IMG/VR virus record: IMGVR_UViG_3300036770_007539
Span: 124,001-188,000 of that record
Length of the DNA: 64,000 bases
Strand: one strand, 5' to 3'
A program made the translations under genes and the position numbers. Below, one piece after another: positions 13,078-64,000 of the stretch; positions within the stretch are counted from its first letter, which is position 1; every line of letters begins with the position of its first letter. The notes beneath the pieces were generated by a model that saw only the letters and a list, made by a program, of their open reading frames with translations, made no database searches and was not told where the DNA came from.

Positions 13078-13115
13078 TATTTTAATATAATGTAAAGTTT
13101 TTAAAAGGTTTATTT

Positions 13116-50060: not shown

Positions 50061-50498
50061 ATGAGTTTTGATTTGAAAATTTTAAATGGGGATCTTGTAG
50101 TAGACTCTACTGGAGATTTAAAAAAAGTAGAAAACAAAGATAAGTTAATACAAGATCTATTGAAAATATGCACTACCCCAAAAGGATCTAAGAGAAAATA
50201 TCCTTTTTATGGATCTTTAATTACTAATTCTTTAATTGGATCTGCTTTCCCCGAAGATTTTATTAACACCTACGCAAGTTCTCAATTAAAAGATTCTTTG
50301 CAATCTCTTATAGATATGCAGGGGCTTCAGCAGAGATTTCAATATATGTCTCCCCAAGAATCCATTGCTGCTTTGCGCGAGGTTTCTATTAATAGATTTA
50401 CTGGAGATCCTAGATATTTTTTAATTTACATTTCAGTTATTAATAAAGCTTTTGATAGGGTGGATGCGCAATTTGAATTAAACACTACTGGATTATAA
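50061..50498 (+). CDS. Baseplate wedge / sheath initiator (gp25-like)
   Basis: DL.I..GDL, LIQDL...TPKGS...P.YGS. Confidence 0.72.
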   Translation: MSFDLKILNGDLVVDSTGDLKKVENKDKLIQDLLKICTTPKGSKRKYPFYGSLITNSLIGSAFPEDFINTYASSQLKDSLQSLIDMQGLQQRFQYMSPQESIAALREVSINRFTGDPRYFLIYISVINKAFDRVDAQFELNTTGL

Positions 50499-50635
50499 TT
50501 AAAATTTGTTAATTTTTAAAATTAAATCTTAAGTAATGTAAATTTGTTTTTAACGTTAAAAACAAGGCATATTGATATATTTTGTTATAGTTACATTTGT
50601 AAGTTATTTTTAATAATACTTTAAGGCAGATCTAA

Positions 50636-53600
50636 ATGGCTAGAATTCGTACATCCAGTGAAATTATCAGAAGCTATCTGGATTTTTATAGGACGGCTCA
50701 GCCCTCTTTAGATACTAAACCGGGAACCGTCACAAGAGATATCCTAATTGATGGACCATCTGATCAGATTTCTAGATTATATGATGAATTAAACAGCGTA
50801 TCTAATCTTCAGTCTTTGCGCCAGTCATTTGGAACAGACCTTGACAACTGGGCTCAAAATATAGGCGCTAGCAGGCGTAGAGGTGCAAAAGCTACGGTTC
50901 CTGCTTTGTTATTATTTGATAGCATTGACGCAGACATTCCTATTAGCAAAGGAGATTTAATTTTTGCTAAAAACGGATCTTCTTTTGCCGTATTAAATAA
51001 TATTGTTATTTCTTCTACTAAAGAAAGTCAGTATAAATCCACAGTATCAAAATACAGAGGCGACTTAGACTTTTTAGGATTTACTGAGGAGTATGCTTTA
51101 GAAGTTGTTGTAGAGGCAACATCTCCTGGTGAGCAAGGAAATATATCTAAATATAATTTAAACAATACAAATATTTCTGGAATTACTCATGTAACTAACG
51201 TATTTCCTGCGGGCGGAGGTCGTCCAGCAGAAACCGATTCTATATTTAAAAATAGAATATTGGCAATCTTTAGCGGCTCCAATACTGGAACATCTTTGGG
51301 ATATGAAAGTACAGCAAGAACAGATCCGTCTGTTATTGATGCTATAGTAGTTTCCCCTGGAGATCCACTAATGACTAGGGACGGAACTCAAGTATCGATA
51401 GCGGAAGATGGTACAAGAACAATTATTTCCGATGGTACTGGTGGAAAAGTTGATATTATTACTTATGGAGTTAGATTACAAGAAACCATAGATTCATTTA
51501 TTTACAAAGATAAAAGTAATACAGGGGACCCTACTAATTTTGCTAATGATTTTATTTTAGGGCAGGTTTCTGGAGACGAAAATAAAACGGTAACTAAAAA
51601 AAGAATAGATAATTTGGCATCTGGAATTCTTCCAAATCAGCCTACTTATAATATTGCTTCTGTTACTGGATCGTCTAGCGGACCTAATTTTAAAGCTATA
51701 TCCGTTGATTCTTTCGGTAGAATTTCTGGAAATTATGAATTAATTAAAGATACGGGAGCATATGCTGGATCTCCTTGGGGCTTTGATAGGTTGCGATGGA
51801 TTTCAAATACAATAGAAGATTATCCGGAAGATAAGAGTAAAATTAATTTTAATAGCCAAGACCCTTTGTCTTACACTGATATTTCTAAAATTGGAAGAAT
51901 AACTCAAAATATTGTTATTACTAATGAAAATAGCAAAACATCCCCTACAGACAGGACAATAATTCAACTAGCTCACAAGCCCGTAACAACAGTTACTAGA
52001 GTATTTAACGTTTCTACCGGGGAAAGATATGTAATAGCTAGCCAAAATCCAGATGGCACCGGCACTATTAACACCACTGGAAGAATAAAAATTACTGGAA
52101 AATCTTTACCTTCAACCAGTGACATCTTGCAAGTAGATTATACTTGGGTTTTTGATTATGATCCATATTGGGATTTTGATAATAGATTTTTTTCTTTCAA
52201 TGCTAGAACCGCAACAGATAGCGTTGACTGGGGATATTCTAATTTAGTTAGAAGAGAAAGGGGCGTCTTAGTTTCATCTGGAAGTTATTTATCTTTAGAT
52301 CTAACTCATAATGTTTCTTCTGTAATTAAAGTAGATGTTTTCTCTGAGGAAAATTCTTCCGTTACAATAACATCGGGCAAATTATCTGTAATAACATCTT
52401 CTGTCATATCTAATATAGTTTCAATTAAAAGAGTTTCTGATAATTCTGAACTTTGGGACACGCAGGATAATGACGGAACTATTAGCGGACTAACCGCTTA
52501 TTTGCCAACAGACACAGTTGCCCAATTCAATGATGCAGTAGTTATAATTTATAATGCAACTGATATTTATGGAGATACTGGGTCGTTTAATAACAATCAA
52601 TTAACAATTATCCCTTCAAGCTTAGCTGTTTCAGGGGCAATTGTTGAAGCTACTTATGTTTCTAATATTAACAACTTATTGCCTGCAACTTTGCTATCCT
52701 CTCTCCCAGCTATAAGAAGTGAAAATTATTTCTCAACTAACAGCGCCAATGTGATTGGTAATCAACCAACTTCTCATATATTTTCAGGTTTAAATATTGT
52801 TCAAAATCTTAGACAAGCCCCCTCTAATTTAGTTTTAACCATTACCGGTACAATTGTTCCAGGTACTATTACTTGCTCTGGCACAACAATTTTTAATTCA
52901 GGGGAAATTGTATTTACTGCAAGTAATTCTGGTTTAACTCATGATTTGTCGCCAGCCATTAGAACATCTCTGGGTTTGACATCTAGAGATTCTTTGCCTT
53001 CTAATATTAAAATTGGAAGATTAGTTCAATTTGAAAAAGTTGTAACTGATACCGGTTCTAATGTTTTAGCCATTATTAATTCGTATGATGTTCCAGGTTA
53101 CTCAATCAAAGATAATTTTTTAGTTAAATCTGAATCAGTGCAAAATACTAATTTAAATAATTTTCAAATTACCCTGCCTAGTACAATAGACAATTTAAAT
53201 AATGAAATTAATATTGGAGATAAAATTAGAGTAAGATTCTTTTTAATTTACATGAATGATTCAGAAAATGTATACTTTACTAGGTCAGGCACTCAATATA
53301 CACAAAAAAGGTTTGTTTTTGTTGATGCTATAGCCATTACAAGTGGATTTAATAATTCATCTTCTTCTGCGGCAACTTTAACTGTTAACAATTTAAATCA
53401 GCCACTAAATAAATCTAGATATAAAACTTTTTATAATTATTTAGCTCCTAAAAGCAATGAAAGAATAACTATCACTTCTAACTATAATAAACTAATAAGC
53501 GATGTTACTTTAGCTGTCGAGCAAAACAGACCAATTACTGCAGATGTATTAGTGAAAGAAGCTCAGTTTATATTAGTAGATGTAACAATGTACGTTGTTT

Positions 53601-53866
53601 TAACCGAGGAGTTTAAAAATTCTCCATCTGTAGTAAAGCAAAATGTTCAAGATACTGTTACGGCAGCAGTTAATTCTGATGCTTTGAATCAAATTATTGA
53701 CTCTTCAGATCTCATTAATACTGCATATACAGTGCCAGGAGTGGATAGGGCAAGAATTATATTCTTTAATGAGAGCGGAAAGACAGGCTCAGTGTTAAGT
53801 ATTAAGCCACAAAAAAATCAATATACCGTGGCAAATACTATCTCTATAGTTATAGAAGAACGATAA
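50636..53866 (+). CDS. Baseplate J-like wedge protein (gp6-like)
   Basis: D.KPGTV.RD, DLD..A.N.G..R, A..PG..GN, GG...ETD..F..RI; C-terminal VPGVD. Confidence 0.8.
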   Translation: MARIRTSSEIIRSYLDFYRTAQPSLDTKPGTVTRDILIDGPSDQISRLYDELNSVSNLQSLRQSFGTDLDNWAQNIGASRRRGAKATVPALLLFDSIDADIPISKGDLIFAKNGSSFAVLNNIVISSTKESQYKSTVSKYRGDLDFLGFTEEYALEVVVEATSPGEQGNISKYNLNNTNISGITHVTNVFPAGGGRPAETDSIFKNRILAIFSGSNTGTSLGYESTARTDPSVIDAIVVSPGDPLMTRDGTQVSIAEDGTRTIISDGTGGKVDIITYGVRLQETIDSFIYKDKSNTGDPTNFANDFILGQVSGDENKTVTKKRIDNLASGILPNQPTYNIASVTGSSSGPNFKAISVDSFGRISGNYELIKDTGAYAGSPWGFDRLRWISNTIEDYPEDKSKINFNSQDPLSYTDISKIGRITQNIVITNENSKTSPTDRTIIQLAHKPVTTVTRVFNVSTGERYVIASQNPDGTGTINTTGRIKITGKSLPSTSDILQVDYTWVFDYDPYWDFDNRFFSFNARTATDSVDWGYSNLVRRERGVLVSSGSYLSLDLTHNVSSVIKVDVFSEENSSVTITSGKLSVITSSVISNIVSIKRVSDNSELWDTQDNDGTISGLTAYLPTDTVAQFNDAVVIIYNATDIYGDTGSFNNNQLTIIPSSLAVSGAIVEATYVSNINNLLPATLLSSLPAIRSENYFSTNSANVIGNQPTSHIFSGLNIVQNLRQAPSNLVLTITGTIVPGTITCSGTTIFNSGEIVFTASNSGLTHDLSPAIRTSLGLTSRDSLPSNIKIGRLVQFEKVVTDTGSNVLAIINSYDVPGYSIKDNFLVKSESVQNTNLNNFQITLPSTIDNLNNEINIGDKIRVRFFLIYMNDSENVYFTRSGTQYTQKRFVFVDAIAITSGFNNSSSSAATLTVNNLNQPLNKSRYKTFYNYLAPKSNERITITSNYNKLISDVTLAVEQNRPITADVLVKEAQFILVDVTMYVVLTEEFKNSPSVVKQNVQDTVTAAVNSDALNQIIDSSDLINTAYTVPGVDRARIIFFNESGKTGSVLSIKPQKNQYTVANTISIVIEER

Positions 53867-53867
53867 T

Positions 53868-56800
53868 ATGGCAGTATTAAAAGCTTTAGAAGTTAAAGTT
53901 TTAAGTAGCACAAAGATTCAGGCTAAATTTAATTTAGAGCTTGATCCTTTGATTAATACATCTAATATATCTATCAGATCCAACGTATTTAATATTCCAG
54001 ACCCTGCTGTCTTGGAGGTCAAGGTTAGTAAAGATAAATTAACTATTTTAACTCAGCCTTTATTTCCTTACACTCAATATTTTGTAACTTTCAAGTCTTC
54101 AGATTTATTATTGTTTAAATCTATCAATGGCGTTTCCCTAGTGGAAGATGGAAAATTAAATGTATTTTTAATTTTAGGTGCGGAAGACCCTAGCAATCCT
54201 TTTAGAGATTATTTCTTATATGAATTAAAAGATGATCCATATAATTTAGATTATGGCACAATAGTTAGAGATATAATAAATGTTAACTCAGACTTTTTAG
54301 CTAATGCTCTTTATGATATACGAGAGCTTAAAAATGATAACTATTTAAGCAGAACTATTTTTAATGAATTAAAAACTAGGGGAGCTGGACCCGTAGACCG
54401 CTTATCCGAAGGCGGAGCATATGAGATAATTAAAGTTTCTAAAAATGCCGAAGGAAGATTAATAAATGATTCTATTAATTTTGAAGAGTTTCCTTCTTAT
54501 CCAATAACCTTGCAAAGAAAGGTTGTTTCATCAGAAAAGTTAACTCCCGGAAGTGGCACTTCTACAGTTAACGGTTTGTTGTTAAACTTAAAAAATAAAC
54601 CAATAACTGCAGTCAAATCTATTATTATTCAATATAGTAACTCTGGAAAATACATTTATAATATTTCTTCTTTGGGGTATCAAATACAGGATAATCGATA
54701 TGACCCTGATTACGCTTCTTCTTATCAATTATTAGAAGAAAACCAGGTATTATTATCTTCTTTAGTGCTAGAGGATGATAATTTTTTCACCCCTGTAGCC
54801 GGAGATATTGTTTATGTCTCTTATGAATATAAAGATTTGGGCAGAATTGTCAGCGAGGATTCGATAGAAGTTTATAAAATTTTAGAAATTAATAGAGAGG
54901 TCGTACCTCCAATCTTAAATTCCTTTTCGCTTCCTCATTATCCAATAGTAGATGAAGTTGGAAATATTCCAACATTTAATGGAATAGAATTTTTAGATCC
55001 TCTTTCCAATCCTCCTTTTTCTCAAACTCATCCTGCATTTATTAAAGAAATACCTTACAAGCTGGAAGGTCTTCCCAAAGCTGTTGGGGAGTATTCTGTT
55101 GATTATTCTACTGGATCTATTTATGTTTATGGAGCTGAAAAAAATGATGGAACTGGAGATTTTCCACCGGTAGTATCATACTTATATAAAAATTTATTTG
55201 TTAAAGAGTTAGATTATAATTATGATGAAGACACATATGAAGTTGTAAGATCTCCTTTGAGATTTTTAGAAGGCGATTCCGCTAAAATAAGTTTCTCTTA
55301 TGAGAAGACTTTAATTCCATATATTGATTTTATACCTAAAGTTCATACTGAAGTTTTAAATGAAAGAATTGAAAATAAATTTCTTTCCAATAACTCTTTT
55401 ATTGTCAACAATGCCCCAGTGACAAATGTTTTTAGAATATATAATGAAACTTCTGGGGAGGTTTATTCAGTTGATAGGTTTTCCTTTAATAAGGTATATT
55501 TTTCATCTAGAATATCTCCACAAGTTAATACAATCATTAAAGAACGAGCAGAATTTTCAAAAGTTGAAAATGAACTACTTCTTGTAAATGAAGAGCTAAC
55601 TAACTTATCTTCAGTTAAAATTTTTAAAATTAATTTACAAAATAATAAGATAATATCTTCTACTGAAGATTCTATAGGCTCTTCTTTTAATAGTTCTGTC
55701 TTTTTTAGTAGGACTGATATTTTCTCTACTGAATTGTATTATGATTACGTTAGTTTGACCGAAGGAAGTAATATTAATAAATTGTCTGTTGGTCAATATC
55801 TAATTAATTATCAAGATGGCATAGTATATGTTGGAGTTGATAATAATCAAGTTTATGATGTGGGAACAATTTCATATAAAAAACCATACATAAAGACTCA
55901 ATTTAGTCATATTATTGCTGTTAATAACTTATATAATAGCATTCTGCCAAATAAAATTTATAAAAATATTAAATATAATTCTTTCTCTGATTCTGAAATT
56001 TTACCATCAACTTTTGAAGTTTCAGATGAAAGATTTTTAAATCAAAGCACACTAAATCCATATATTGTATCTTCAAATACAATTACTGTAACTGATGATA
56101 TTAGTTATGTTAGGGGCGTGTACGATTTATATGATTTGAATAATAATATTGATGTTGTTAATTTTTCTGAAAATTATTCTTCTTCATCCAATGTTATAAC
56201 TTTGACTCCAATACAGAGAATAGTTTCTAGCCAGATATCTGCTGGATTAATTGTTTCATTACCATATGTTTCTCCGGGAGTAGAAATATACGAGGTTAAA
56301 TCTATAATTAGAAAATCTGACAATGTAGAATTATATGATACCGGTGCAATAATTTCTGGTTATGATATTATTTTATCAGGGGTTAATTCTCCTGTAACTG
56401 GAGAAGAAGTTACAGTTTATTATAGCATAAGAATGAATGGCTCTGCTACCCCAGTCGTTGATTATGCAAGGGGCGATCTTTTTCTTGATTATGAATATGT
56501 TGCAGATGAAGTCCTTGTAAGTTATGAGCATGGGGATAATTGTTTAGATTTTTCTCAAAGTAATTCTATTGATGAAGGCGAAGAATATTATGTTACTTAC
56601 AAGGTTGGAGCATTAAGAAATGCACTATTTAAAAACTTTGGTTCATTAGTAAATATTCCAATTTTAAATAGTTTCGATACTTCATTAGAAAGAGAAAGAT
56701 ACAGAGATGCATTGAGGGGAGCCTTGCAATCCTTTGCTAAAGGTCCAACTTTACCTTCTATGAAGTCTTTAGTTGAATTTATCACTCATATTCCGCCTGA

Positions 56801-59800
56801 AATTGTTGAAGCCGCTTTCGATAATTGGAACTTAAACATTGGTCATTTATACAATAATCAAATTGAAACAACTGGCAATCTTTTGCTTAGCCCTGGAAAA
56901 TTTGACAATGGTGTTTTAATTGAAAACGCCGATGAAACAATATCATTCCCAGTGTCTAACAATCTAAAATTAGAAGAAGGTACTTTAGAAATGTGGGTTG
57001 TTCCTAAGTGGAACGGCTTAGACAATGATGCTACACTAACCTTTCAAGTTCTAAAAGATGGATATGTATTGCCGAGCGATCATATTTTTATTGGAGCCGC
57101 AGGAAATCATCCAACGTTAGATCTTAATAATAAATTTTCTGTCATTAAAAATGATAATTCAATAGGCTTGCCAACAGCAATCTACACCAATATTGGCGCT
57201 TTTATTTTTTATGATGAAGACCAGTTCCGTTGGAAATTCTTAGTAAGAGATAAGATAAGTGACGGATATTCTTATCATGGAACAATAGAAACTTCTGGAA
57301 GTTTTTATCATGTTAATTTTATTGATGGTCTAGGCGAGTTGACAGATAAATTAAAAACAAAAAATTCTATTATTGAATTTACTTTCAATATAGATTCTCA
57401 GGACGAGTTATATCCAGACGGCTACGTTGATGGCTATGCAGATGGATATGTAGATGGTTATGATGGATATTCTGATGGATATTATCCTTTAGATGGATAC
57501 GTGCCAGGTTATTCCTTTGACGGTATAAGATTCATGTCCGATAACGAACATTATTTATTTGATTTTGGTAATGAGTCTTATAAAAATAGATTCTCTTTAT
57601 TTAAAGATGGCTCTGGTTATTTAACTTTTAGAGTATACGATAATGGATCATTTGATAGAATTAACAAATATACAGTCAGTGCCGACATTTCAAATTGGAG
57701 AGCTGGAGAATCTCACCACGTTGCTATTTCTTGGAAGTTGGCAACAAAAGATAAAAAAGATGAGATGCATTTATTTATTGATGGCATAGAGATTCCAAAC
57801 ATCATTAAGTATGGCGGCAGACCAATTTCTACATTAACAGATCGGTTTAGGACGGTAGTTCCAGAATATGTACTAGGAACTATTACTCAAAAGATAATTA
57901 CATTTAATGATTTAAATACTGATGGAAGTAATCTTGTATATTCCGACAGTATTAATTTTACTTCAGAAGGAATTGTTCCAGGGGACATTTTAGAAATTAA
58001 AGAATTGGGATTGGGTGCTTATACCATATCTTCCGTTTCTGGTAATTACTTGACTTTAACAAGTGCGGTTCCTTCAGTGCTAAGCAATGCACGATTCACA
58101 ATAAATCCATATTCTATTATTGTATCTTCGGAAATTGATCTTTATAAGAACTTTACAGTTTCGCTTTTCAGTGGTTCTTCCGAAGAAGAACTACCCGGAC
58201 TAAGAGCTGATATTCCAGGCTATGAGATTAGTAAAAACTTTTTAAATCAAAATATTTTAACTATTTTGGGAAATGCCAATGTTGGAGATCAGGTTGTTAT
58301 TAGGACATTAGGGTTGAATTTCCGAAGAGCCAGAGAAAGAGTTTATGTTTGGGGCAACAATTTAAATATATTAAGAACACAGCTGCCATCACCAATCAAT
58401 TTAGACGAAGTAAAAATATACCCAGTCATTTTGCCAAAGGTAGCTATTGGACCAAGTAATTCTACCTATTCTTTAGGTTTGTTTAATTTTACTACGTCAG
58501 ATATTTCTCAAACTTCTTCTCCTTTAGAAGGAAGAACTTTGGCAATAAAAGTATTTTCTGGAAATGTTGATTTTTCAACTCCAGTTACGGTAGTTATTAA
58601 TGGCACAACCAACTCTACACCTAATGAAACTTTAACCTTTAGTTCAGCAGGGACACAATACACAACTAAAAAATTTACCAACATTACATCTGTGGATGTA
58701 ATTGCTAAGCCGTTTAATCCGCTAAAAAATTCGGCAATTGTTGAAATTAAAGAAAAGTATACTATTACTTATTCCGAAGGAAATTCTGTTTTTCCAGTTA
58801 TTAGGTATTCTTACAAAACTCAAACTGGAAGTACTTTATCTGGAAATTCTGGCTCTTCTATTGTGGAAGATTTAAATGGATATTTTGTTTTTTCAAATAT
58901 AGATCAGTCCTTAGTTATCTCTTCACCTATAAGTGTGGCTGGCACTTATCAAATTGTCAATAAGCTTTCCGATAAAAGCATAGAAGTTTTCCCTGCCCTT
59001 CCTGCAAGTTTTTCTAATGGAATCTATGATATTTTTAATACATCTATTAGCCGCTCAGGTTTTGCTAATGGATTTTTTACATTAGAGACTGCTGGTCAGG
59101 TAAATGTTCCATTTAATTTAAATAACGGATATTATGATTTTGATTATTCTGTTAATTTAGAAATTCCTTTTGATCCATTAACAAATGATAAAATGTATAT
59201 TGGATCTAGTATTCATGGTGATTGTCAGGCGTCTTCTATTATTGATGAATTGAGAATTTTATCTACAATGTTAACCGATGTCAGAATAGGCGAGACTTTA
59301 ATATCTGGAACTGAAAGTGTAACTATAGACGCTGCTAAGATTAGACCATTTAGAAAAAATAGTGACACATTAACTTTGATTCACTTCGATGATAAACCAT
59401 TTAATAATGATTCAGATTTTTGGATTTCATCTAACAAAGAATATATTCAATCAACATCTAGTGTTAACAGTGATTTCGGAAAGTCTTTATTAATTAAAGA
59501 TAGACCTTTAATTTATGATAATTTAGGATATCTATCAACATCTTCTCAGGGTACAATTGAATTTTGGGTTTCTCCAATGTTTGATACTGGAAACGACCCA
59601 GAGTATAGGTTTTATTTTGATGCCGCCGCATTGACCACGGAAGATTTGATTTCTACTTCTAAGGCAAGCATTATATTGAATAATAGAGCGTCTTCTATTA
59701 GTTCTATTTATGTAGAAGGTGATAAGAAGAACTATGCAGCTCAAGCTGTAATACAATCAGATTTTAAAACAGTAAAATTGAGCATTCCATTGCCATATCA

Positions 59801-60545
59801 AAAAACTCCTGTAAAAGTAACATATACTCAAGTGGGAGTTCTTGGAGATAGAATATCTATTTATAAAGATTCAGAGAGCTATATTAATTTAACTGTTAAA
59901 GCTTCTGGTAAAGAGTATCAAGTTAGACAACCTGTCTTATGGACTAAAAACTCTTGGCATAGAATTAAAGCTACATTTAAATTTAATCAGCCCAATAATA
60001 ATGATGAGATTGGATTGTTTGTGGACGGTGAAGAAAGAGGAACAGTCAGATTTGGAAATGGTTTGCTTTTTGGAACAGGAGCTGTTTATGGTCAGGGATT
60101 TGCCGGTGTAGATAATTCTACGCTAACTGCCGACATTAATTTCTTGGATGTTATTAGTAAATTTTACATAGGCTCTGACATTAATTCCGTTAATTTAGCC
60201 AAAGCCAGAATAGATAATTTTAAAATTTCTAATATTGTTCAGCCGTTCTATATGATCGCGGGTCAATCTAAAGACGTAAACTATAATTCCAATATAGATA
60301 CTGTATTTCCCGTTGTAGAAGATGCTTATACGACATTTTTATTAAATTTTAATGCTTTATTTAGTATAAATACAGAGTGGGCAACTCTAAGAGATAAATA
60401 CTTTGGAATTTATAATTTTACAATTAAAATAATAGATTCTTTTGATATAGTTTCTGAAAGCGAAAAAGTAAAGCAAATATTAGAGACTTTAATCAATATT
60501 CTTAAGCCCGCTCAATCTAAGGTAACATTAGAATACTTAGACTAG
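53868..60545 (+). CDS. Very large baseplate wedge protein with LamG/concanavalin-like domains
   Basis: 2225 aa; YRDAL...KGPT..SM; EGTLEMWV.P.W, HHVAISW..LFIDG, IDELRI, WHRI...LFVDG; ends LKPAQSKV. Confidence 0.7.
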   Translation: MAVLKALEVKVLSSTKIQAKFNLELDPLINTSNISIRSNVFNIPDPAVLEVKVSKDKLTILTQPLFPYTQYFVTFKSSDLLLFKSINGVSLVEDGKLNVFLILGAEDPSNPFRDYFLYELKDDPYNLDYGTIVRDIINVNSDFLANALYDIRELKNDNYLSRTIFNELKTRGAGPVDRLSEGGAYEIIKVSKNAEGRLINDSINFEEFPSYPITLQRKVVSSEKLTPGSGTSTVNGLLLNLKNKPITAVKSIIIQYSNSGKYIYNISSLGYQIQDNRYDPDYASSYQLLEENQVLLSSLVLEDDNFFTPVAGDIVYVSYEYKDLGRIVSEDSIEVYKILEINREVVPPILNSFSLPHYPIVDEVGNIPTFNGIEFLDPLSNPPFSQTHPAFIKEIPYKLEGLPKAVGEYSVDYSTGSIYVYGAEKNDGTGDFPPVVSYLYKNLFVKELDYNYDEDTYEVVRSPLRFLEGDSAKISFSYEKTLIPYIDFIPKVHTEVLNERIENKFLSNNSFIVNNAPVTNVFRIYNETSGEVYSVDRFSFNKVYFSSRISPQVNTIIKERAEFSKVENELLLVNEELTNLSSVKIFKINLQNNKIISSTEDSIGSSFNSSVFFSRTDIFSTELYYDYVSLTEGSNINKLSVGQYLINYQDGIVYVGVDNNQVYDVGTISYKKPYIKTQFSHIIAVNNLYNSILPNKIYKNIKYNSFSDSEILPSTFEVSDERFLNQSTLNPYIVSSNTITVTDDISYVRGVYDLYDLNNNIDVVNFSENYSSSSNVITLTPIQRIVSSQISAGLIVSLPYVSPGVEIYEVKSIIRKSDNVELYDTGAIISGYDIILSGVNSPVTGEEVTVYYSIRMNGSATPVVDYARGDLFLDYEYVADEVLVSYEHGDNCLDFSQSNSIDEGEEYYVTYKVGALRNALFKNFGSLVNIPILNSFDTSLERERYRDALRGALQSFAKGPTLPSMKSLVEFITHIPPEIVEAAFDNWNLNIGHLYNNQIETTGNLLLSPGKFDNGVLIENADETISFPVSNNLKLEEGTLEMWVVPKWNGLDNDATLTFQVLKDGYVLPSDHIFIGAAGNHPTLDLNNKFSVIKNDNSIGLPTAIYTNIGAFIFYDEDQFRWKFLVRDKISDGYSYHGTIETSGSFYHVNFIDGLGELTDKLKTKNSIIEFTFNIDSQDELYPDGYVDGYADGYVDGYDGYSDGYYPLDGYVPGYSFDGIRFMSDNEHYLFDFGNESYKNRFSLFKDGSGYLTFRVYDNGSFDRINKYTVSADISNWRAGESHHVAISWKLATKDKKDEMHLFIDGIEIPNIIKYGGRPISTLTDRFRTVVPEYVLGTITQKIITFNDLNTDGSNLVYSDSINFTSEGIVPGDILEIKELGLGAYTISSVSGNYLTLTSAVPSVLSNARFTINPYSIIVSSEIDLYKNFTVSLFSGSSEEELPGLRADIPGYEISKNFLNQNILTILGNANVGDQVVIRTLGLNFRRARERVYVWGNNLNILRTQLPSPINLDEVKIYPVILPKVAIGPSNSTYSLGLFNFTTSDISQTSSPLEGRTLAIKVFSGNVDFSTPVTVVINGTTNSTPNETLTFSSAGTQYTTKKFTNITSVDVIAKPFNPLKNSAIVEIKEKYTITYSEGNSVFPVIRYSYKTQTGSTLSGNSGSSIVEDLNGYFVFSNIDQSLVISSPISVAGTYQIVNKLSDKSIEVFPALPASFSNGIYDIFNTSISRSGFANGFFTLETAGQVNVPFNLNNGYYDFDYSVNLEIPFDPLTNDKMYIGSSIHGDCQASSIIDELRILSTMLTDVRIGETLISGTESVTIDAAKIRPFRKNSDTLTLIHFDDKPFNNDSDFWISSNKEYIQSTSSVNSDFGKSLLIKDRPLIYDNLGYLSTSSQGTIEFWVSPMFDTGNDPEYRFYFDAAALTTEDLISTSKASIILNNRASSISSIYVEGDKKNYAAQAVIQSDFKTVKLSIPLPYQKTPVKVTYTQVGVLGDRISIYKDSESYINLTVKASGKEYQVRQPVLWTKNSWHRIKATFKFNQPNNNDEIGLFVDGEERGTVRFGNGLLFGTGAVYGQGFAGVDNSTLTADINFLDVISKFYIGSDINSVNLAKARIDNFKISNIVQPFYMIAGQSKDVNYNSNIDTVFPVVEDAYTTFLLNFNALFSINTEWATLRDKYFGIYNFTIKIIDSFDIVSESEKVKQILETLINILKPAQSKVTLEYLD
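57417..57500 (+). repeat. Tandem coding repeat of seven DGY units
   Basis: DGYVDGYADGYVDGYDGYSDGYYPLDGY, encoded with varied synonymous codons. Confidence 0.9.
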
Positions 60546-60567: not shown

Positions 60568-63489
60568 ATGACAAAAAGAATAGAAGTTTCCGGATTGCAA
60601 AATTTATTTAGGGACGCTCAGCGTGTATCTAAAGAAGACTTGGACACAGAGCAAAACTATAATAATAAAATTCAATCATCAATTATAAACAATCATCTTG
60701 GCTCTGGAATATTATTAGAAAATCCAGAACAAGTTATTATTTTTGATTCTGATTCTTTAACTTCTGTTCAAGCAGGTCTGTTAGCCGCTGGTAATTTTGA
60801 TGGAACAGGCTTGTCGCCCCACTCTCAGCCATCGGATATTAATCTTGGAAATCAATTAGAAATATCTTTAACGGATTCTTCCGTTGTTGGCAGATTTTCT
60901 GCTAAGGTAGCTATAATAGGGTTGTCTTTTGATGGAGAATTGCAGATTGATAGATTTTATTTTTATAAAAACGAATCTCAAGTTACTGCAAATCATTATA
61001 AAAGAGTTCTTGCTATTTTAACAAATGATTTTAAAGGTAATAATAATTGTTCAAGAAATTTGGGCGGCAGATTAGTCATTAAAGAAGCAAAGTCTTTTCA
61101 AATATCGAGAGATCCTATTATGATTTCTCAGGACGTAGAGCCTGATATTTTTTGGAGAGATTTTAAAATAGCCAATTCCACTTCTAGCTTACAAGCTACA
61201 TTGCAAGCCGCCATTGGACCTGAATATAATGTTGATTCTTTAAATATAAATACTACTGGCAGACCTAATAGAGAATTGACTATTGGAGACGTATCATCTC
61301 ATGTTGGTCAAAAATTTATTGCAAAAACTGATAATATTCAAAAAATTACTTTATTAATGGGAGCTTCTCGCGATGACTCAGCTCCAGAAGTCAATAGATA
61401 TGATTGGTCTGGCTCTTTAGTTGTAAGTATTTATGCCTTGCAAACTTCTGTTTCTTGCCCAACAGATATAATTCCATCTTTGGCAATTGATTTTGATCCT
61501 CAAGCAGAACCATTGGTTCAATTTGCTTTTAATCAATCAGATCTTAAGGATAATGGATATGTATTAACCGATGTTTTGCAGCCCGTGGATATTGTCTTTT
61601 CATCTTCTAAAATAGGCGCATCTAGATCTTTAAATATAAATAATTATTACGCTTTTACAATTAAAAGAACAGGAGATGCTTCGGTTGGAAACATTCAATT
61701 TGGCTCAGGCAATAATCGCACTGATGACTCTAAGTTAACTTTATATAGTGGCGGATCTTGGGTAGATGTTGTAGAAGAAGATTTATGGTATCAAGTTTGG
61801 ACCGATGCACTTAAAATATCAGATGGTCAAGGGTATGACTCTGGTCAAGGAGTTTTTTATCCTAAAACAATTATAGATTCTTCTACTGGAGCTACAATTG
61901 ATAATAAAAAGCAAAATTTTTCATTTAACGACACAGGATTTAATATTCCAAATATTGGAATTTTACAAGCAGTTACAGAGTCTAGTGTAATTGAACAAGA
62001 TGAAAGAACGGGCAATGATACTTTTTCAAGAAAGCAGTTTATTCCCAGCTTTAGTTTAATTTCTAATACTGAATTAACGGATCTTCAAGTTACAACAGAT
62101 CCTTTGGTGGTTGGAGCTGCTAAAGATGTCAACCCTAAAAAAAATCCAGTTTTGCTTAAAAACCAAAGTGTAATTGGTCTTGCTAAATCAAATATATTTT
62201 GTATTTTGAATCCAGACCCAGATTTAATTACCAATAATTTGGTTGGATCTGTTTTAACTCCTAACCTTTTGTCTAGTAGTAAATTTAAAATTGTTAAAGT
62301 TGATTTATGTACAGATGGGTATGGCGATGTAAATGGCGACGGTCAGATCGATTTGTCAGATGTTACTCTTGCGTCTTCTTTAATTGGCGAAAGTATATAT
62401 TATCCTGTTACTCAGCAAAAAATTGTTGATGGATACATTAATACATTTGATCTGTTAAGGGCGGACGTGGATGGTGACGGATATATCACTACTAATGATA
62501 TTGATTTACTAACTCAATACGTAAATAAATCAATTAATTCATTTCCTGCAGGCACATCATTTAATCATCTATGCCTTGAGCTTCAGCCATTAGTTGGGAG
62601 ATACGATGGATACTTTGACTGCGGAGATGGATATGTAAGGGTAGATGGCTCCTCTTCTAATATAATTTCATCTAGTTTACTTAGTGAGTATGAGCTTTTA
62701 TATGATGGATATTACATTCCATCTAATCTGGAATTAGATCCTGTATTTTCTACCGTTCCATTTGCAGGAGTTAATTATCAAATTGCTCCTAAGCCATTTT
62801 GGCAAGATTGGCAAATAAACTTATCTTCTGATGCAAGACTAGTTCCGGCAGCGTTTACATATCTTGAAAGTTCGGAAACTTTTTCTTGTACTGAGACTGT
62901 TGATACGGTGTGCGATTCTCAATATCAAGAAGCTCCAACAATAGACACTGGAAGAAATGACTTTTTTATTCCAAATAATTTATTAATTGGTAATGGTCAA
63001 ATTTTGAATGTTGATGGGTCGCATTTTAAACAAGACTTTGAAATTGCAACTATTGAGCTTAGACTTCCAGAAATTCCTTTAAATGAATCAAAAATTAATA
63101 TTTTTGAAAAATTTGTAGTGGACGTAGGCAGTGGTAAAACAGCTTCTGGATATCCGGCTATGAAATATTCTGATTGCTCAACAGTTCAAATAGAAGATTT
63201 GTTTTTAAATAAAGTTAAATTCAATGTTGCAGTTCAAGCCTTCTATAAAAACTTGGATGGATATGACGCAGATTTAGATGGGTATGTTGTCATTGAAGAT
63301 CCTACGATTGGCGTCCTAATAGATCATTCTACTGGCATTCTTACTTTAAATGCCAGCGATCTTGCCGAAGATACGGTCTTCAAATCATTAGTAACAAAGA
63401 TTTCAGTAACAGTATACTTAAAGAAGGCAGGGTGGAATAATAGACATCTTATTGTGACTTCGAATGAGATACAGGGATTACTCTCATAA
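60568..63489 (+). CDS. Virion/baseplate-associated protein with a dockerin-like paired Ca-binding motif
   Basis: 973 aa; YGDVNGDGQIDLSDV and RADVDGDGYITTNDI; eight DGY motifs in the C-terminal half. Confidence 0.65.
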   Translation: MTKRIEVSGLQNLFRDAQRVSKEDLDTEQNYNNKIQSSIINNHLGSGILLENPEQVIIFDSDSLTSVQAGLLAAGNFDGTGLSPHSQPSDINLGNQLEISLTDSSVVGRFSAKVAIIGLSFDGELQIDRFYFYKNESQVTANHYKRVLAILTNDFKGNNNCSRNLGGRLVIKEAKSFQISRDPIMISQDVEPDIFWRDFKIANSTSSLQATLQAAIGPEYNVDSLNINTTGRPNRELTIGDVSSHVGQKFIAKTDNIQKITLLMGASRDDSAPEVNRYDWSGSLVVSIYALQTSVSCPTDIIPSLAIDFDPQAEPLVQFAFNQSDLKDNGYVLTDVLQPVDIVFSSSKIGASRSLNINNYYAFTIKRTGDASVGNIQFGSGNNRTDDSKLTLYSGGSWVDVVEEDLWYQVWTDALKISDGQGYDSGQGVFYPKTIIDSSTGATIDNKKQNFSFNDTGFNIPNIGILQAVTESSVIEQDERTGNDTFSRKQFIPSFSLISNTELTDLQVTTDPLVVGAAKDVNPKKNPVLLKNQSVIGLAKSNIFCILNPDPDLITNNLVGSVLTPNLLSSSKFKIVKVDLCTDGYGDVNGDGQIDLSDVTLASSLIGESIYYPVTQQKIVDGYINTFDLLRADVDGDGYITTNDIDLLTQYVNKSINSFPAGTSFNHLCLELQPLVGRYDGYFDCGDGYVRVDGSSSNIISSSLLSEYELLYDGYYIPSNLELDPVFSTVPFAGVNYQIAPKPFWQDWQINLSSDARLVPAAFTYLESSETFSCTETVDTVCDSQYQEAPTIDTGRNDFFIPNNLLIGNGQILNVDGSHFKQDFEIATIELRLPEIPLNESKINIFEKFVVDVGSGKTASGYPAMKYSDCSTVQIEDLFLNKVKFNVAVQAFYKNLDGYDADLDGYVVIEDPTIGVLIDHSTGILTLNASDLAEDTVFKSLVTKISVTVYLKKAGWNNRHLIVTSNEIQGLLS

Positions 63490-63510
63490 TCTGCTGTTAT
63501 AGAAAGGCTC

Positions 63511-64000
63511 ATGCGAGTTAAAGTACAAGGATTTTTATTTGGTAAGTCTCATAGCTGGGCATATGTTAATCAAAATTTAGGCAGATCCTTGCTTAAATTG
63601 GGGCATGATGTAGAGTTCGTTTCCACAGATGGCAATGACCCCAAGCATACCCCAAATGATTTAAAACCGTTTATTAAATCATTTGGAATTGGCAATTATG
63701 ATATGCAAATATCTTATACTGCTATGATTAATTTTCCTCAATATTTATCTTCTGGAGATAAAAATAGATTTGGAATATGGTGCTATGAATTTCCAATTAT
63801 TCCAAAAGACTTTATTAAATATTATAAAAGCTGCGATAAAATTCTAGCTCCCAGTAATTTTGCCAAAGATATTTTTATTAATAATAAAGTTCCAGGAGAT
63901 AGTGTTGTAGTCGTTCCTCATGGTATTGATTTAGATGCATTTAATAATAAAAATAAATTTAAATTAAAAACCAATAAAAAAATAAAATTTTTAATTCCAT
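63511..64000 (+). CDS. Glycosyltransferase, GT4/GT-B-like, 3'-truncated (not in the ORF track)
   Basis: MRVKVQGFLFGKSHSWAYVNQNLGRSLLKLGHDVEFV...WCYEF...CDKILAPSNFAKDIF...VVVVPHGID; frame open to the window end. Confidence 0.8.
   Translation, partial: MRVKVQGFLFGKSHSWAYVNQNLGRSLLKLGHDVEFVSTDGNDPKHTPNDLKPFIKSFGIGNYDMQISYTAMINFPQYLSSGDKNRFGIWCYEFPIIPKDFIKYYKSCDKILAPSNFAKDIFINNKVPGDSVVVVPHGIDLDAFNNKNKFKLKTNKKIKFLIP

What the first reader, a model, noticed from the sequence alone, without database searches (positions are those of the whole stretch)
63511..64000. Glycosyltransferase directly downstream of the baseplate genes
Seen: a GT4-like ORF missing from the ORF track starts 21 nt after the last structural gene, in the same direction. 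Inference: co-expression with late genes suggests a virion-protein substrate rather than DNA, and it may begin a larger glycan cluster beyond the window.
Basis: partly seen in the sequence, partly recalled or inferred. Interest (0 to 1): 0.6.

Follow-up and report, generated by a model that had tools for sequence, protein, structure and literature searches.

The report
Huge-phage glycan island behind baseplate genes
The cut-off ORF at the window's end is a real glycosyltransferase that opens a 17-kb, 18-gene sugar-chain factory fixed behind the tail genes of a lineage of uncultured huge phages; it most likely sugar-coats the virus particle, but what it decorates is still unproven.

Summary
An ORF starts at 63511, 21 nt after the 973-aa gene, on the same strand, and runs off the window. 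On the parent 301-kb viral contig it is a 364-aa retaining GT-B glycosyltransferase of family GT4, with a conserved E-x7-E motif and an AF2 model at pLDDT 95. Its best fold match is the chlorovirus B736L glycosyltransferase.

Eighteen tightly packed genes (17.2 kb) follow. They include three GT2 domains, a GT2-GT6 fusion, GT11, two pyruvyltransferase-like genes, two methyltransferases, and GalE-like, GDP-mannose-dehydratase and RmlB-like enzymes. None is a polytopic membrane protein.

In 13 of 13 related loci the GT4 sits in the same place, after the same two giant tail-module proteins. A small GT core is conserved and the periphery varies.

DNA glycosylation is not supported: the protein is GT4, not T4-type, and the only ThyA homolog is an ordinary thymidylate synthase. 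The acceptor is unproven. I favour virion proteins (about 0.45) over host-envelope glycans (about 0.28). Co-expression with late genes could not be tested because no RNA data hold the locus.

The parts
63511..64000 (+). 5' 490 nt (163 codons) of the 364-aa GT4 glycosyltransferase gene. The full gene runs to extended coordinate 64605 (G000 187511-188605; L003:3012-4106). It is the first gene of an 18-gene glycan island that ends at extended coordinate 80668 (G000 204668).
   Evidence: ORF; full length. Pfam Glyco_transf_4 at 3e-10 and phrog_2170 glycosyltransferase at 5e-27. E255-x7-E263, R170, K171, K195 and G277-G278 are conserved in 35 homologs. AF2 pLDDT 95.2. Foldseek top hits are all GT4-type GT-B enzymes.
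63490..63510 (+). 21-nt spacer between the 973-aa gene and the GT4. It holds a purine-rich AGAAAGG ending 3 nt before the ATG and has no room for a promoter plus terminator.
   Evidence: Sequence. No terminator-like site at this junction.
60568..63489 (+). 973-aa protein directly upstream, with a dockerin/EF-hand-like Ca-binding module at residues 585-653. It is a presumed tail-fibre or baseplate-periphery protein and is present in 13 of 13 related loci immediately or shortly before the GT4.
   Evidence: Pfam Dockerin_1 at 3e-8. No PHROG match and no PDB relative beyond dockerins. Synteny.
53868..60545 (+). 2225-aa protein, a presumed baseplate or fibre giant protein. Its homologs in relatives carry a faint Laminin_G_3 hit.
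   Evidence: Homologs at 33-74% identity in relatives. Faint Laminin_G_3.
50636..53866 (+). gp6-like baseplate wedge subunit (1076 aa). It is the first gene of the 31.4-kb, 22-gene run without any gap above 30 nt that contains the whole island.
   Evidence: phrog_6 at 9e-29. 30% identity to the Bacillus phage G gp188 baseplate wedge subunit. Run length.
50061..50498 (+). gp25/W-like baseplate protein (145 aa).
   Evidence: phrog_2669 at 1.4e-7, plus phrog_120 and phrog_43 baseplate wedge.
50572..50579 (+). TTGATATA motif 64 nt upstream of the gp6-like gene, a candidate promoter element. Further copies lie at window 60442-60449 (126 nt before the 973-aa gene) and at G000 196743 (mid-island).
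   Evidence: The 8-mer is enriched about 14-fold in upstream regions: 6 observed against 0.44 expected. Positions. Its function is not shown.

Best explanation
SHOWN: the ORF encodes a soluble, 364-aa retaining GT-B glycosyltransferase of CAZy-type family GT4. It is the first gene of an 18-gene, 17.2-kb phage-encoded glycan-assembly island (G000 187511-204668). The island lies between the baseplate/fibre genes and a tubulin-like gene of a >300-kb uncultured phage from a subsurface metagenome. The GT4, two GT2-type genes and the two giant upstream proteins form a positionally fixed core across a broad phage lineage. The rest of the island varies from phage to phage.

INFERRED mechanism: the enzymes work in the host cytoplasm on NDP-sugars that the phage partly makes itself. 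These sugar-supply enzymes are a GalE-like UDP-hexose 4-epimerase, a GDP-mannose 4,6-dehydratase, an RmlB-like dTDP-glucose 4,6-dehydratase, and a sugar-1-phosphate nucleotidyltransferase elsewhere on the contig. The conserved GT4 and GT2 enzymes would lay down an inner, lineage-constant part of an oligosaccharide, with the GT4 adding an alpha-linked sugar with retention. Clade-specific enzymes would then build and cap a variable outer part. In this phage these are another GT2, a GT2-GT6 fusion, an alpha-1,2-fucosyltransferase-type GT11, two pyruvyltransferase-like proteins and two methyltransferases. The outer part may include a histo-blood-group-like Gal/GalNAc-alpha1,3(Fuc-alpha1,2)Gal end.

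MOST LIKELY ACCEPTOR (inferred, not shown): phage-encoded virion proteins, on the tail-fibre/baseplate periphery or the capsid. That would give the particle a variable glycan coat, as in mycobacteriophages and chloroviruses.
For: Enzyme identity: Pfam GT4 N-domain above cut-off; E-x7-E and phosphate-binding residues conserved; high-confidence GT-B model; best structural matches are chlorovirus NY-2A B736L, GlgM, PglA, PimA, MshA, BshA and WaaG.

Island content. The 269-aa gene is GT2-like. The 325-aa gene is GT9-like as a lead only.

Cytoplasmic, carrier-independent chemistry: none of the 18 island proteins has more than one predicted hydrophobic segment. The few multi-TM ORFs elsewhere on the contig match no Pfam or NCBIfam family, so there is no recognisable Wzx, Wzy, ABC-permease, phosphoglycosyl-transferase or Gtr-type protein.

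A phage-intrinsic rather than host-specific acceptor: the GT4 and the 973-aa protein are present and syntenic in 13 of 13 loci from different samples, down to 39% identity. The GT2 and GT2-like genes are in 11 of 13. Peripheral genes are swapped among loci (GT10, GT11, GT6, DegT, carbamoyl- and FkbM-methyl-transferases).

Packing: the island lies in the contig's longest gap-free same-strand run, headed by the gp6-like baseplate gene.

Precedent: virus-encoded soluble GTs plus GMD glycosylate the chlorovirus capsid in the cytoplasm (PMC5408694). Mycobacteriophage capsid and tail-tube glycans are described in PMC12619734.
Against: There is no direct evidence for any acceptor. No RNA runs hold the locus, so timing is unknown. 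Promoter and terminator scans are near chance. The same gap-free run includes a tubulin-like gene, so it is not purely a late structural unit. In the experimentally studied analogues the GT genes are not next to structural genes, and chlorovirus GTs are early, so position is weak evidence. No Ser/Thr-rich, mucin-like acceptor tract exists in any ORF; the maximum is 47% S+T in 30 aa. GT4 enzymes such as PimA, PglA and WaaG act on membrane lipid-linked acceptors without having TM helices, and the family's N-domain is basic (median pI 8.8), so a lipid-linked host acceptor is not excluded. No GDP-fucose synthase ortholog was found, so the fucose branch is incomplete on this contig. The contig is only about 71% complete.
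Confidence: 0.45

Rival explanations
1. Host-envelope remodelling. The island's soluble GTs act at the cytoplasmic face of the membrane on the host's own lipid-linked LPS, capsule or S-layer glycan intermediates. They would rely on host initiation, flipping and ligation, and would change the infected cell's surface, for example to block superinfection or to stop progeny re-adsorbing to debris.
For: This is the usual, untested reading of similar multi-GT clusters with GT10/GT11 and NDP-sugar epimerases in large cyanomyoviruses (PMC12801897). Fold neighbours PglA, PimA and WaaG use lipid-linked acceptors without TM helices. The GT4 N-domain is basic. Pyruvylation and methylation are typical of bacterial surface polysaccharides, with weak CsaB/WcaK-like hits. 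PHROGs files the GT4 under 'moron, auxiliary metabolic gene and host takeover'.
Against: No initiating phosphoglycosyl transferase, flippase, polymerase, ligase, ABC exporter or Gtr-type membrane protein is recognisable on the contig. A host-specific acceptor fits poorly with a GT core that stays in a fixed position next to the fibre genes across phages only 39-50% identical. Experimentally proven phage modification of host glycans uses membrane Gtr or acetylase proteins of temperate phages (my own knowledge; see also PMC12619734).
Confidence: 0.28
2. DNA hypermodification. The GTs glycosylate modified bases in phage DNA to evade restriction, as T4 alpha- and beta-glucosyltransferases do on 5-hydroxymethylcytosine.
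For: Phage GTs are classically DNA-modifying, and diverse glycans on phage DNA have been reported (cited in PMC12619734). The contig is incomplete, so a base-modifying enzyme could lie in the missing part.
Against: The protein matches only GT4/GT1-type families. No T4-type enzyme appears in sequence or profile searches of the PDB, nor among the listed top ~50 fold matches. The only thymidylate-synthase-family gene is an ordinary ThyA (TIGR03284 297 bits against a cut-off of 108). Eight or so GT domains plus pyruvyl- and methyl-transferases, GT6 and GT11 are hallmarks of hetero-oligosaccharide assembly on sugar acceptors, not of base glycosylation.
Confidence: 0.04
3. Another cytoplasmic acceptor. 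The island glycosylates a non-virion phage or host protein, or makes a free or small-molecule-linked oligosaccharide, for example a decoy or an osmolyte-like or signalling glycan.
For: GT4 fold neighbours include small-molecule glycosyltransferases (BshA, MshA, GlgM, tetrahydrobiopterin GT). No acceptor could be identified.
Against: An 18-gene pathway with capping modifications (pyruvate ketal, O-methyl) and clade-variable outer enzymes looks like a surface-exposed, diversifying glycan rather than a metabolite. There is no precedent in phages.
Confidence: 0.13

Closest known systems
Chlorovirus autonomous capsid glycosylation (PBCV-1 GTs, GMD/GMER; NY-2A B736L / PBCV-1 A546L GT4)
   Same: Virus-encoded, mostly soluble GTs without signal peptides; virus-encoded GDP-mannose 4,6-dehydratase; methylated and fucose/rhamnose-type sugars; a conserved glycan core with variable decoration. 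B736L is the best structural match of the GT4 (E 2e-14, TM 0.75; PMC5408694).
   Different: That is a eukaryotic-alga virus. Its GT genes are scattered and expressed early, and its acceptor (Vp54) is proven. Here the genes form one island behind the tail genes of a tailed phage, identity to B736L is only 14%, and the acceptor is unknown. B736L's own function is also unknown.
Mycobacteriophage virion glycosylation (Freeman et al. 2023, as summarised in PMC12619734)
   Same: Phage-encoded GTs that place glycans on capsid and tail-tube subunits. This is the only experimentally established virion glycosylation in tailed phages that I could find cited.
   Different: Those are actinobacteriophages of about 50-160 kb with a few GT genes. 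Here there is an 18-gene island with its own sugar-nucleotide enzymes and no sequence kinship (the best cultured-phage hits are at most 25% identical). I could not read the primary paper.
Cell-wall synthesis/modification gene clusters of large cyanomyoviruses (P-SSM2, S-SCSM1, S-SCSM2R)
   Same: Many GTs (GT1, GT2, GT10, GT11, GT25) plus NDP-sugar epimerases in large lytic aquatic phages (PMC12801897). P-SSM2 also has a D-X-D-type GT6 (PMC3516806).
   Different: It is a different phage lineage, and no fixed link to the baseplate module is reported. The function there is also only inferred (host surface). This island adds pyruvyltransferases, a tri-domain GT2-GT6 fusion, and a conserved-core/variable-periphery layout shown across 13 loci.
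Bacterial histo-blood-group-like O-antigen loci (e.g. E. coli O86) and Bacteroides ovatus BoGT6a
   Same: Adjacent GT6 (alpha-1,3-Gal/GalNAc transferase type) and GT11 (alpha-1,2-fucosyltransferase type) genes with GalE-like and GMD enzymes. The GT6 domain scores 135 bits to BoGT6a and about 117 bits to human GTA/GTB, and the catalytic WHDE is kept (PMC3516806).
   Different: There is no Wzx/Wzy/WecA-type machinery. The phage GT6 has D-V-D (metal-dependent type, as in P-SSM2 and vertebrates) where BoGT6a has N-A-N, and it is fused behind a GT2 domain and a 400-aa N-terminal region of unknown fold. No Fcl ortholog was found.
T4 alpha-/beta-glucosyltransferases (DNA 5-hmC glucosylation)
   Same: Phage-encoded GT-B fold enzymes.
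   Different: They belong to different families (GT72/GT63). No sequence or profile match, and none among the listed top fold matches. No hydroxymethylase is present on the contig.
Moraphages (aquatic jumbo phages with four core GT orthogroups; PMC12619734)
   Same: About 300-kb uncultured aquatic myovirus-like phages with gp6, gp25 and UvsW homologs and several GTs in the core genome, whose function is left open.
   Different: The hallmark heat-shock gene (HSP70) and the class-II LysRS were not found on this contig. That paper does not mention tubulin. Membership could not be checked by identifier, so the relation is open.

Membership tests
CAZy-type GT4 (retaining GT-B glycosyltransferases) | N-terminal Glyco_transf_4 domain above Pfam's cut-off | tested here: met
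   PF13439 scores 40.7-43 bits against a cut-off of 28.5.
CAZy-type GT4 (retaining GT-B glycosyltransferases) | C-terminal Glycos_transf_1 nucleotide-sugar-binding domain | tested here: inconclusive
   The query itself scores 19.3 bits, below the cut-off of 26.4. Many homologs at 46-55% identity carry PF00534 or PF13692 in the precomputed annotation.
CAZy-type GT4 (retaining GT-B glycosyltransferases) | E-x7-E motif and basic phosphate-binding residues in the C-terminal domain | tested here: met
   E255 is invariant and E263 is at least 90% conserved. R170, K171, K195, G277 and G278 are invariant in 35 sequences.
CAZy-type GT4 (retaining GT-B glycosyltransferases) | Two-Rossmann GT-B fold closest to GT4 structures | tested here: met
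   AF2 pLDDT 95.2. Foldseek top hits are 3OY2, GlgM, 7MI0, PglA, PimA, MshA and BshA at E 1e-12 to 2e-14.
CAZy-type GT4 (retaining GT-B glycosyltransferases) | Retaining transfer from an NDP-sugar; donor and acceptor identity | not testable with these tools
   This needs an enzyme assay.
T4-type DNA glucosyltransferases / DNA base glycosylation | Sequence or fold grouping with AGT/BGT-type enzymes | tested here: not met
   Only GT4/GT1 families hit. The PDB profile search and the listed top ~50 fold matches hold no AGT or BGT. The genome scan with PF09198 found nothing, but its control rang nowhere, so that scan alone is uninformative.
T4-type DNA glucosyltransferases / DNA base glycosylation | A pathway that makes a hydroxymethylated (or otherwise glycosylatable) base | tested here: not met
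   The single PF00303 homolog is a canonical thymidylate synthase (TIGR03284 297 bits against a cut-off of 108). Caveat: the contig is about 71% complete.
Wzx/Wzy- or ABC-dependent surface-polysaccharide loci | Initiating phosphoglycosyl transferase, flippase or ABC exporter, polymerase or ligase (polytopic membrane proteins) | tested here: not met
   No island protein has more than one hydrophobic segment. The five multi-TM ORFs on the contig have no Pfam or NCBIfam match.
Gtr-type seroconversion modules of temperate phages | Membrane GtrA flippase, GtrB bactoprenol-GT and a serotype-specific membrane GT | tested here: not met
   All GT2 proteins here are short and soluble, and no membrane partner is present. 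The definition of the family is from my own knowledge.
Autonomous virion glycosylation (chlorovirus / mycobacteriophage type) | Virus-encoded soluble GTs, with or without virus-encoded sugar-nucleotide enzymes | tested here: met
   At least six Pfam-supported GT domains, GMD, GalE-like and RmlB-like enzymes, and a nucleotidyltransferase. No TM segments.
Autonomous virion glycosylation (chlorovirus / mycobacteriophage type) | Glycan covalently attached to a virion structural protein | not testable with these tools
   There is no isolate, no proteome and no RNA run. No compositional acceptor signature was found.
GT6 (histo-blood-group A/B-type alpha-1,3 transferases), for the 896-aa neighbour | GT6 domain above cut-off, metal-binding D-X-D (or N-X-N) and the catalytic Glu in WHDE | tested here: met
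   PF03414 at 2e-39. D-V-D and WHDE are seen in the alignment to BoGT6a. The meaning of these motifs is from PMC3516806. Acceptor specificity was not tested.
Moraphage lineage (PMC12619734) | Heat-shock (DnaK-type) gene in all members; LysRS in most | tested here: not met
   No PF00012 or PF00152 match on the contig. The contig is incomplete, so this is weak evidence against membership.

The most novel reading that the evidence does not exclude
A whole lineage of uncultured huge phages carries, fixed behind its tail-fibre genes, a self-sufficient virion-glycosylation system organised like a bacterial O-antigen: a conserved inner-core GT set (GT4 plus GT2s) and a rapidly exchanged outer set (GT6, GT10, GT11, amino-sugar, pyruvyl, methyl and carbamoyl enzymes). 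Each phage would then wear its own 'serotype' of fucosylated, in some cases histo-blood-group-like, glycan on its fibres or capsid. That would make virion glycan coats a general, diversifying feature of environmental huge phages rather than a curiosity of actinobacteriophages and giant eukaryotic viruses.
Probability: 0.33. Interest if true: 0.75.

Novelty: new variant of a known kind. Interest (0 to 1): 0.5.

Why it matters
Virion glycosylation by virus-encoded enzymes is experimentally established only for mycobacteriophages and a few giant eukaryotic viruses. Similar gene clusters in large aquatic phages are routinely, and without tests, attributed to host-surface modification or DNA protection. 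This locus offers a clean test case. It has a positionally fixed GT core next to the fibre genes across many independent metagenomic phages, a swappable outer enzyme set, and no lipid-carrier machinery. If the glycan is on the particle, it would imply that huge phages diversify a sugar coat for adsorption, stability, or evasion of defence or grazing. It would also give a set of soluble, carrier-independent GTs, including a GT2-GT6 fusion and GT11, of possible use for glycoengineering. If instead the host envelope is the target, it would be the first defined mechanism for that in large lytic phages.

Tried and rejected
1. Expression timing. The look-up of sequencing runs found only DNA runs of one subsurface-metagenome study, so co-transcription with late genes could not be tested.

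2. Read layout. Read laying showed the junction spanned without differences by 75.7-kb and 95.4-kb contigs. Those runs may be the assembly's source, and the independent low-depth run has no contig across the junction.

3. Promoters and terminators. The sigma-70 promoter and intrinsic-terminator scan of L003 gave counts near shuffled expectation (145 against 121+/-10.5; 9 against 6.4+/-2.8) and no site at the junction. An enriched TTGATATA motif is only a lead.

4. Acceptor hunt by composition. No Ser/Thr-rich tract was found in any ORF.

5. Upstream giant proteins. PHROGs and PDB sequence searches gave nothing beyond a dockerin-like module.

6. Unnamed island genes. The 308, 323, 210 and 191-aa genes have no Pfam, NCBIfam or PHROG hit. 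The N-terminal 400 aa of the 896-aa protein gave only weak CBM-like leads. The 325-aa model is moderate (pLDDT 66) with GT9-like matches at TM 0.40-0.46.

7. GDP-fucose synthase. No ortholog was found. The 302-aa SDR is GalE-like, and a fourth SDR at G000 44873-45847 is only weakly RmlD-like.

8. Moraphage membership. Not supported by two hallmark genes and not checkable by identifier.

9. High-GC block at G000 270-290 kb. I examined it for export genes and none were recognisable.

10. Tools not used. Complex prediction: neighbourhood alone is not reason enough and no specific acceptor could be nominated. The search of protein representatives: the word search and family scans left the protein's identity in no doubt.

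11. The primary paper of Freeman et al. 2023 is not held.

Full report
OBSERVATION. The ORF listing finds an ATG-initiated ORF at window 63511..63999 on the + strand, 163 codons long and open at the 3' end. The preceding 973-aa ORF (60568..63489) ends with TAA at 63487-63489, so the spacer is exactly 21 nt. The spacer carries AGAAAGG ending 3 nt before the ATG. The fragment alone passes Pfam Glyco_transf_4 (43 bits against a cut-off of 28.5). The description is therefore correct. The ORF was absent from an ORF track only because its stop lies beyond the window.

COMPLETING THE GENE. The window is bases 124001-188000 of a 301,007-bp IMG/VR viral contig with a CheckV completeness of 71%. On it the gene is 364 aa long (G000 187511-188605; L003:3012-4106).
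- It matches Glyco_transf_4 (3e-10), and more weakly Glycos_transf_1 and Glyco_trans_1_4, and phrog_2170 'glycosyltransferase' (5e-27).
- The word-index search returned 459 homologs. Many are about 46-55% identical and sit on contigs of 200-460 kb.
- In an alignment of 35 homologs, E255 is invariant and E263 nearly so, which is the E-x7-E signature of retaining GT4 enzymes. R170, K171, K195 and G277-G278 are invariant.
- An AlphaFold2 model on that alignment has pLDDT 95.2 and pTM 0.92, with two Rossmann-like halves.
- The best Foldseek matches in the PDB are the chlorovirus NY-2A B736L glycosyltransferase (E 2e-14, TM 0.75), GlgM, a Rickettsia GT, PglA, PimA, MshA, BshA, HepE and WaaG. All are GT4-type GT-B enzymes.
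- The best viral matches are GTs of uncultured Caudovirales and of giant viruses.
- Cultured phages hold only relatives of at most 25% identity.

THE ISLAND. Downstream lie 17 more + strand genes with overlaps or gaps of at most 25 nt, ending at G000 204668. That makes 18 genes in 17,158 bp. In order:

| Protein | Assignment |
|---|---|
| 364 aa | GT4 |
| 228 aa | GT2 |
| 269 aa | No Pfam hit; GT2-like by language-model features (0.99; nearest clusters almost all viral) |
| 325 aa | No family; moderate model with GT9-like matches (lead only) |
| 259 aa | GT2 |
| 896 aa | Tri-partite: unknown N-terminal 400 aa (weak CBM-like leads), GT2, then GT6 (PF03414 2e-39) |
| 239 aa | GT11 |
| 324 aa | Polysaccharide pyruvyltransferase |
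| 191 aa | SAM methyltransferase |
| 308 aa, 323 aa | Unknown |
| 404 aa | Weak CsaB/WcaK-like pyruvyltransferase |
| 210 aa | Unknown |
| 231 aa | Methyltransferase |
| 302 aa | GalE-like UDP-hexose 4-epimerase (263 bits to 4ZRM) |
| 333 aa | GDP-mannose 4,6-dehydratase (394 bits; cut-off 415) |
| 319 aa | RmlB-like dTDP-glucose 4,6-dehydratase (356.5 bits; cut-off 365.1) |
| 191 aa | Unknown |

The GT6 domain is closest to Bacteroides ovatus BoGT6a (135 bits) and the human ABO transferases (about 117 bits). It keeps the catalytic WHDE. It has D-V-D where BoGT6a has N-A-N. According to PMC3516806, D-X-D is the metal-dependent type already known from cyanophage P-SSM2, Parachlamydia and vertebrates. 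GT6 and GT11 are adjacent, and they come with GalE-like and GMD enzymes. This is the enzyme set expected for a Gal/GalNAc-alpha1,3(Fuc-alpha1,2)Gal end (inference). No GDP-fucose synthase ortholog was found on the contig. Elsewhere the contig encodes a sugar-1-phosphate nucleotidyltransferase (G000 240929-241654, minus strand) and a GT2-methyltransferase fusion (G000 260362-261636).

BOUNDARIES AND PACKING.
- Upstream, PHROGs identify a gp25-like baseplate protein (window 50061-50498) and a gp6-like wedge subunit (50636-53866; 9e-29). The latter is 30% identical to the Bacillus phage G gp188 baseplate wedge subunit.
- The 2225-aa and 973-aa proteins that follow have no phage-family or PDB relative, apart from a dockerin/EF-hand-like module at residues 585-653 of the 973-aa protein. 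Their structural role is inferred from position.
- Downstream of the island come a tubulin/TubZ-like gene, a UvsW-like helicase, an IstB-like AAA protein, DnaB and both RNR subunits.
- From the gp6-like gene to the tubulin gene there are 22 genes in 31,375 bp with no gap above 30 nt. This is the longest such run on the contig.
- Consensus promoter and terminator scans are near chance, and none falls at the junction.
- An 8-mer, TTGATATA, is enriched about 14-fold in upstream regions. Copies lie 64 nt before the gp6-like gene, 126 nt before the 973-aa gene, and 29 nt before the 308-aa island gene. This hints at internal starts, but nothing is shown.
- No RNA run holds the locus. The DNA runs are all from one subsurface-metagenome study. 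Long contigs in two of them span the junction without a difference, but they may be the assembly's source.

CONSERVATION. Ten IMG/VR loci (GT4 39-81% identical) and three further contigs found by exact-protein look-up show the same order. Those three include ones labelled Pacearchaeota, Anaerovoracaceae and an NCBI MAG.
- The order is: giant protein of about 2230-2280 aa, then a dockerin-bearing protein (781-994 aa as called), then 0-5 kb of variable genes, then the GT4, then GT2 genes.
- The GT4 and the 973-aa homolog are present in 13 of 13 loci. The 228-aa GT2 and the 269-aa GT2-like gene are in 11 of 13.
- The 325-aa gene, the 259-aa GT2 and the N-terminal region of the 896-aa protein occur in the closer clade only.
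- In the more distant clade the island is minimal: GT4, GT2, one unknown, GT2-like and the RmlB-like SDR, followed directly by tubulin and UvsW.
- The rest is exchanged among loci: GT10, GT11, GT6, a Glyco_trans_1_2 enzyme, a DegT aminotransferase, GMD, a carbamoyltransferase and FkbM-type methyltransferases.
- So the finding's ORF is the anchor gene of a conserved-core, variable-periphery glycan island that is a fixed feature of this phage lineage.
- The C-terminal third of the 973-aa protein is conserved only in the clade with the larger core. That co-variation is confounded by relatedness and proves nothing.

TESTING THE READINGS.
DNA glycosylation:
- The protein groups with GT4, not with T4 AGT or BGT, by family, profile and fold.
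- The contig's only thymidylate-synthase-family gene is a canonical ThyA.
- The PF09198 genome scan found nothing, but its control rang nowhere, so it adds nothing.
- The enzyme set is that of hetero-oligosaccharide assembly. I rate this reading at about 0.04.

Host-envelope remodelling:
- No island protein has more than one hydrophobic segment.
- The five multi-TM ORFs on the contig match no family. Three of them lie in or beside an anomalous high-GC block.
- No initiating transferase, flippase, polymerase, ligase, exporter or Gtr-type protein is therefore recognisable.
- Against dismissing this reading: GT4 enzymes such as PimA, PglA and WaaG work on lipid-linked acceptors without TM helices; the family's N-domain is basic (median pI 8.8); and similar cyanophage clusters are conventionally read this way, although untested (PMC12801897). 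I rate it at about 0.28.

Virion proteins:
- Favoured by the fixed position beside the fibre genes across phages that have diverged to 39% identity. This argues for a phage-encoded, co-inherited acceptor rather than a host-specific one.
- Favoured also by soluble, carrier-independent chemistry with a phage-encoded sugar-nucleotide supply.
- By precedent, every experimentally resolved case of a virus-encoded soluble multi-GT system targets the particle. Examples are chlorovirus Vp54, glycosylated in the cytoplasm with viral GMD (PMC5408694), and mycobacteriophage capsid and tail tube (as summarised in PMC12619734).
- Weaknesses: there is no direct evidence and no Ser/Thr-rich acceptor tract. 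Gene position is not a hallmark in the known systems, since chlorovirus GTs are scattered and early. The gap-free run also holds a tubulin gene. I rate this reading at about 0.45 and other cytoplasmic acceptors at about 0.13.

MECHANISM.
Shown: the enzyme family, the catalytic motifs, the fold, the island content, the lack of membrane machinery, and the synteny.
Inferred:
- The GT4 transfers a sugar from an NDP-sugar with retention of anomeric configuration.
- Together with the conserved GT2-type enzymes it builds a lineage-constant inner glycan on a phage protein in the cytoplasm.
- Clade-specific enzymes extend it, and in this phage they fucosylate, alpha-galactosylate or N-acetylgalactosaminylate, pyruvylate and methylate it.
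- The decorated protein is assembled into the particle.

COMPARISON AND NOVELTY. Phage GTs, multi-GT clusters in large phages, phage GT6 and virion glycosylation are each known. The moraphage paper even lists four GT orthogroups in a jumbo-phage core genome without resolving their role. This contig lacks two moraphage hallmarks, HSP70 and class-II LysRS, so its relation to them is open. Three things are new here:
- the scale and completeness of the island;
- its O-antigen-like architecture of conserved core and variable periphery;
- its strict anchoring between the fibre genes and a tubulin gene across many independent metagenomic phages.

I class it as a new variant of a known kind, with interest 0.5.

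Only table 11 was used. The large representative search and complex prediction were not used, for the reasons given under Tried and rejected. No step needed referral.

Noticed in passing
L004:192-1511 (G000 204691-206010): A tubulin/TubZ-like gene (Pfam Tubulin 2e-17, TubZ-like_C 1e-7) follows the glycan island after a 22-nt gap. It is conserved at 54-61% identity in the same position in six relatives (L009-L014), followed in five of them by a UvsW-like helicase. This is a phage cytoskeleton gene in a lineage with T4-like baseplate and replication genes.
   Followed up: partly
L036 and L037 (G000 about 270000-290000): A roughly 20-kb block has 52-61% GC in a contig that is otherwise about 32% GC. 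Its ORFs are short and overlap on both strands, and only two metallophosphoesterase hits are recognisable. Two tRNAs lie just beyond it (L037:11033-11105 and 13088-13171). It could be a chimeric join, a foreign insert or an unusual non-coding region. The contig's unassigned multi-TM ORFs cluster in or beside it.
   Followed up: partly
window 50572-50579 and 60442-60449; also G000 17870, 102716, 131669, 196743, 223627, 260345: The 8-mer TTGATATA (often TTGATATATT) is about 14-fold enriched within 120 nt upstream of gene starts (6 observed against 0.44 expected). It lies mostly on the coding strand, 12-64 nt before start codons. It is a candidate phage promoter element of unknown class.
   Followed up: partly
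window 60568-63489, residues 585-653: The 973-aa protein upstream of the GT4 carries a dockerin type I / EF-hand-like Ca-binding module (3e-8). The same Pfam hit recurs in its homologs in L021, L023 and L024. A dockerin in a phage tail-module protein suggests cohesin-like docking within the particle or to a host surface.
   Followed up: partly
L008:9411-10067; L023:9419-9976: In two relatives a LigT/2H-phosphoesterase with a weak Acb1 (anti-CBASS) match sits immediately upstream of the GT4, between the fibre genes and the island.
   Followed up: no
window 46174-48315: A 713-aa ORF inside the tail/baseplate module has about 7 predicted hydrophobic segments and no Pfam or PHROG match. It might be a tape-measure-like or membrane-penetrating tail protein.
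   Followed up: no
L010:6347-9964: One relative inserts a 1205-aa protein with ten Big_3_5 Ig-like domains (1e-152) between the 973-aa homolog and the GT4. It is a likely surface-exposed fibre or decoration protein and a conceivable glycan carrier.
   Followed up: no
L021, L022, L023, L024: Contigs that public sources label as Candidatus Pacearchaeota, Anaerovoracaceae or an unnamed MAG carry the same giant-protein/dockerin/GT4/GT2 synteny, so they are evidently phage contigs binned with cells. L021 and L022 also have a faint LAGLIDADG ORF inside the island, and the GT11 gene is shorter in L021 (140 aa) than in L022 (232 aa).
   Followed up: partly
L035 (G000 235873-243766, minus strand); L032:1492-2766: A minus-strand block holds an amidase and a glucosaminidase (lysis), FEN, UvdE and Fpg repair enzymes, a NUDIX protein and a 241-aa sugar-1-phosphate nucleotidyltransferase. 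A separate 424-aa GT2-methyltransferase fusion at G000 260362-261636 is preceded by the TTGATATATT motif.
   Followed up: partly
L036:2-928 (G000 266002-266928, minus strand): An ORF with collagen triple-helix repeats (8e-18) lies at the edge of the high-GC block.
   Followed up: no
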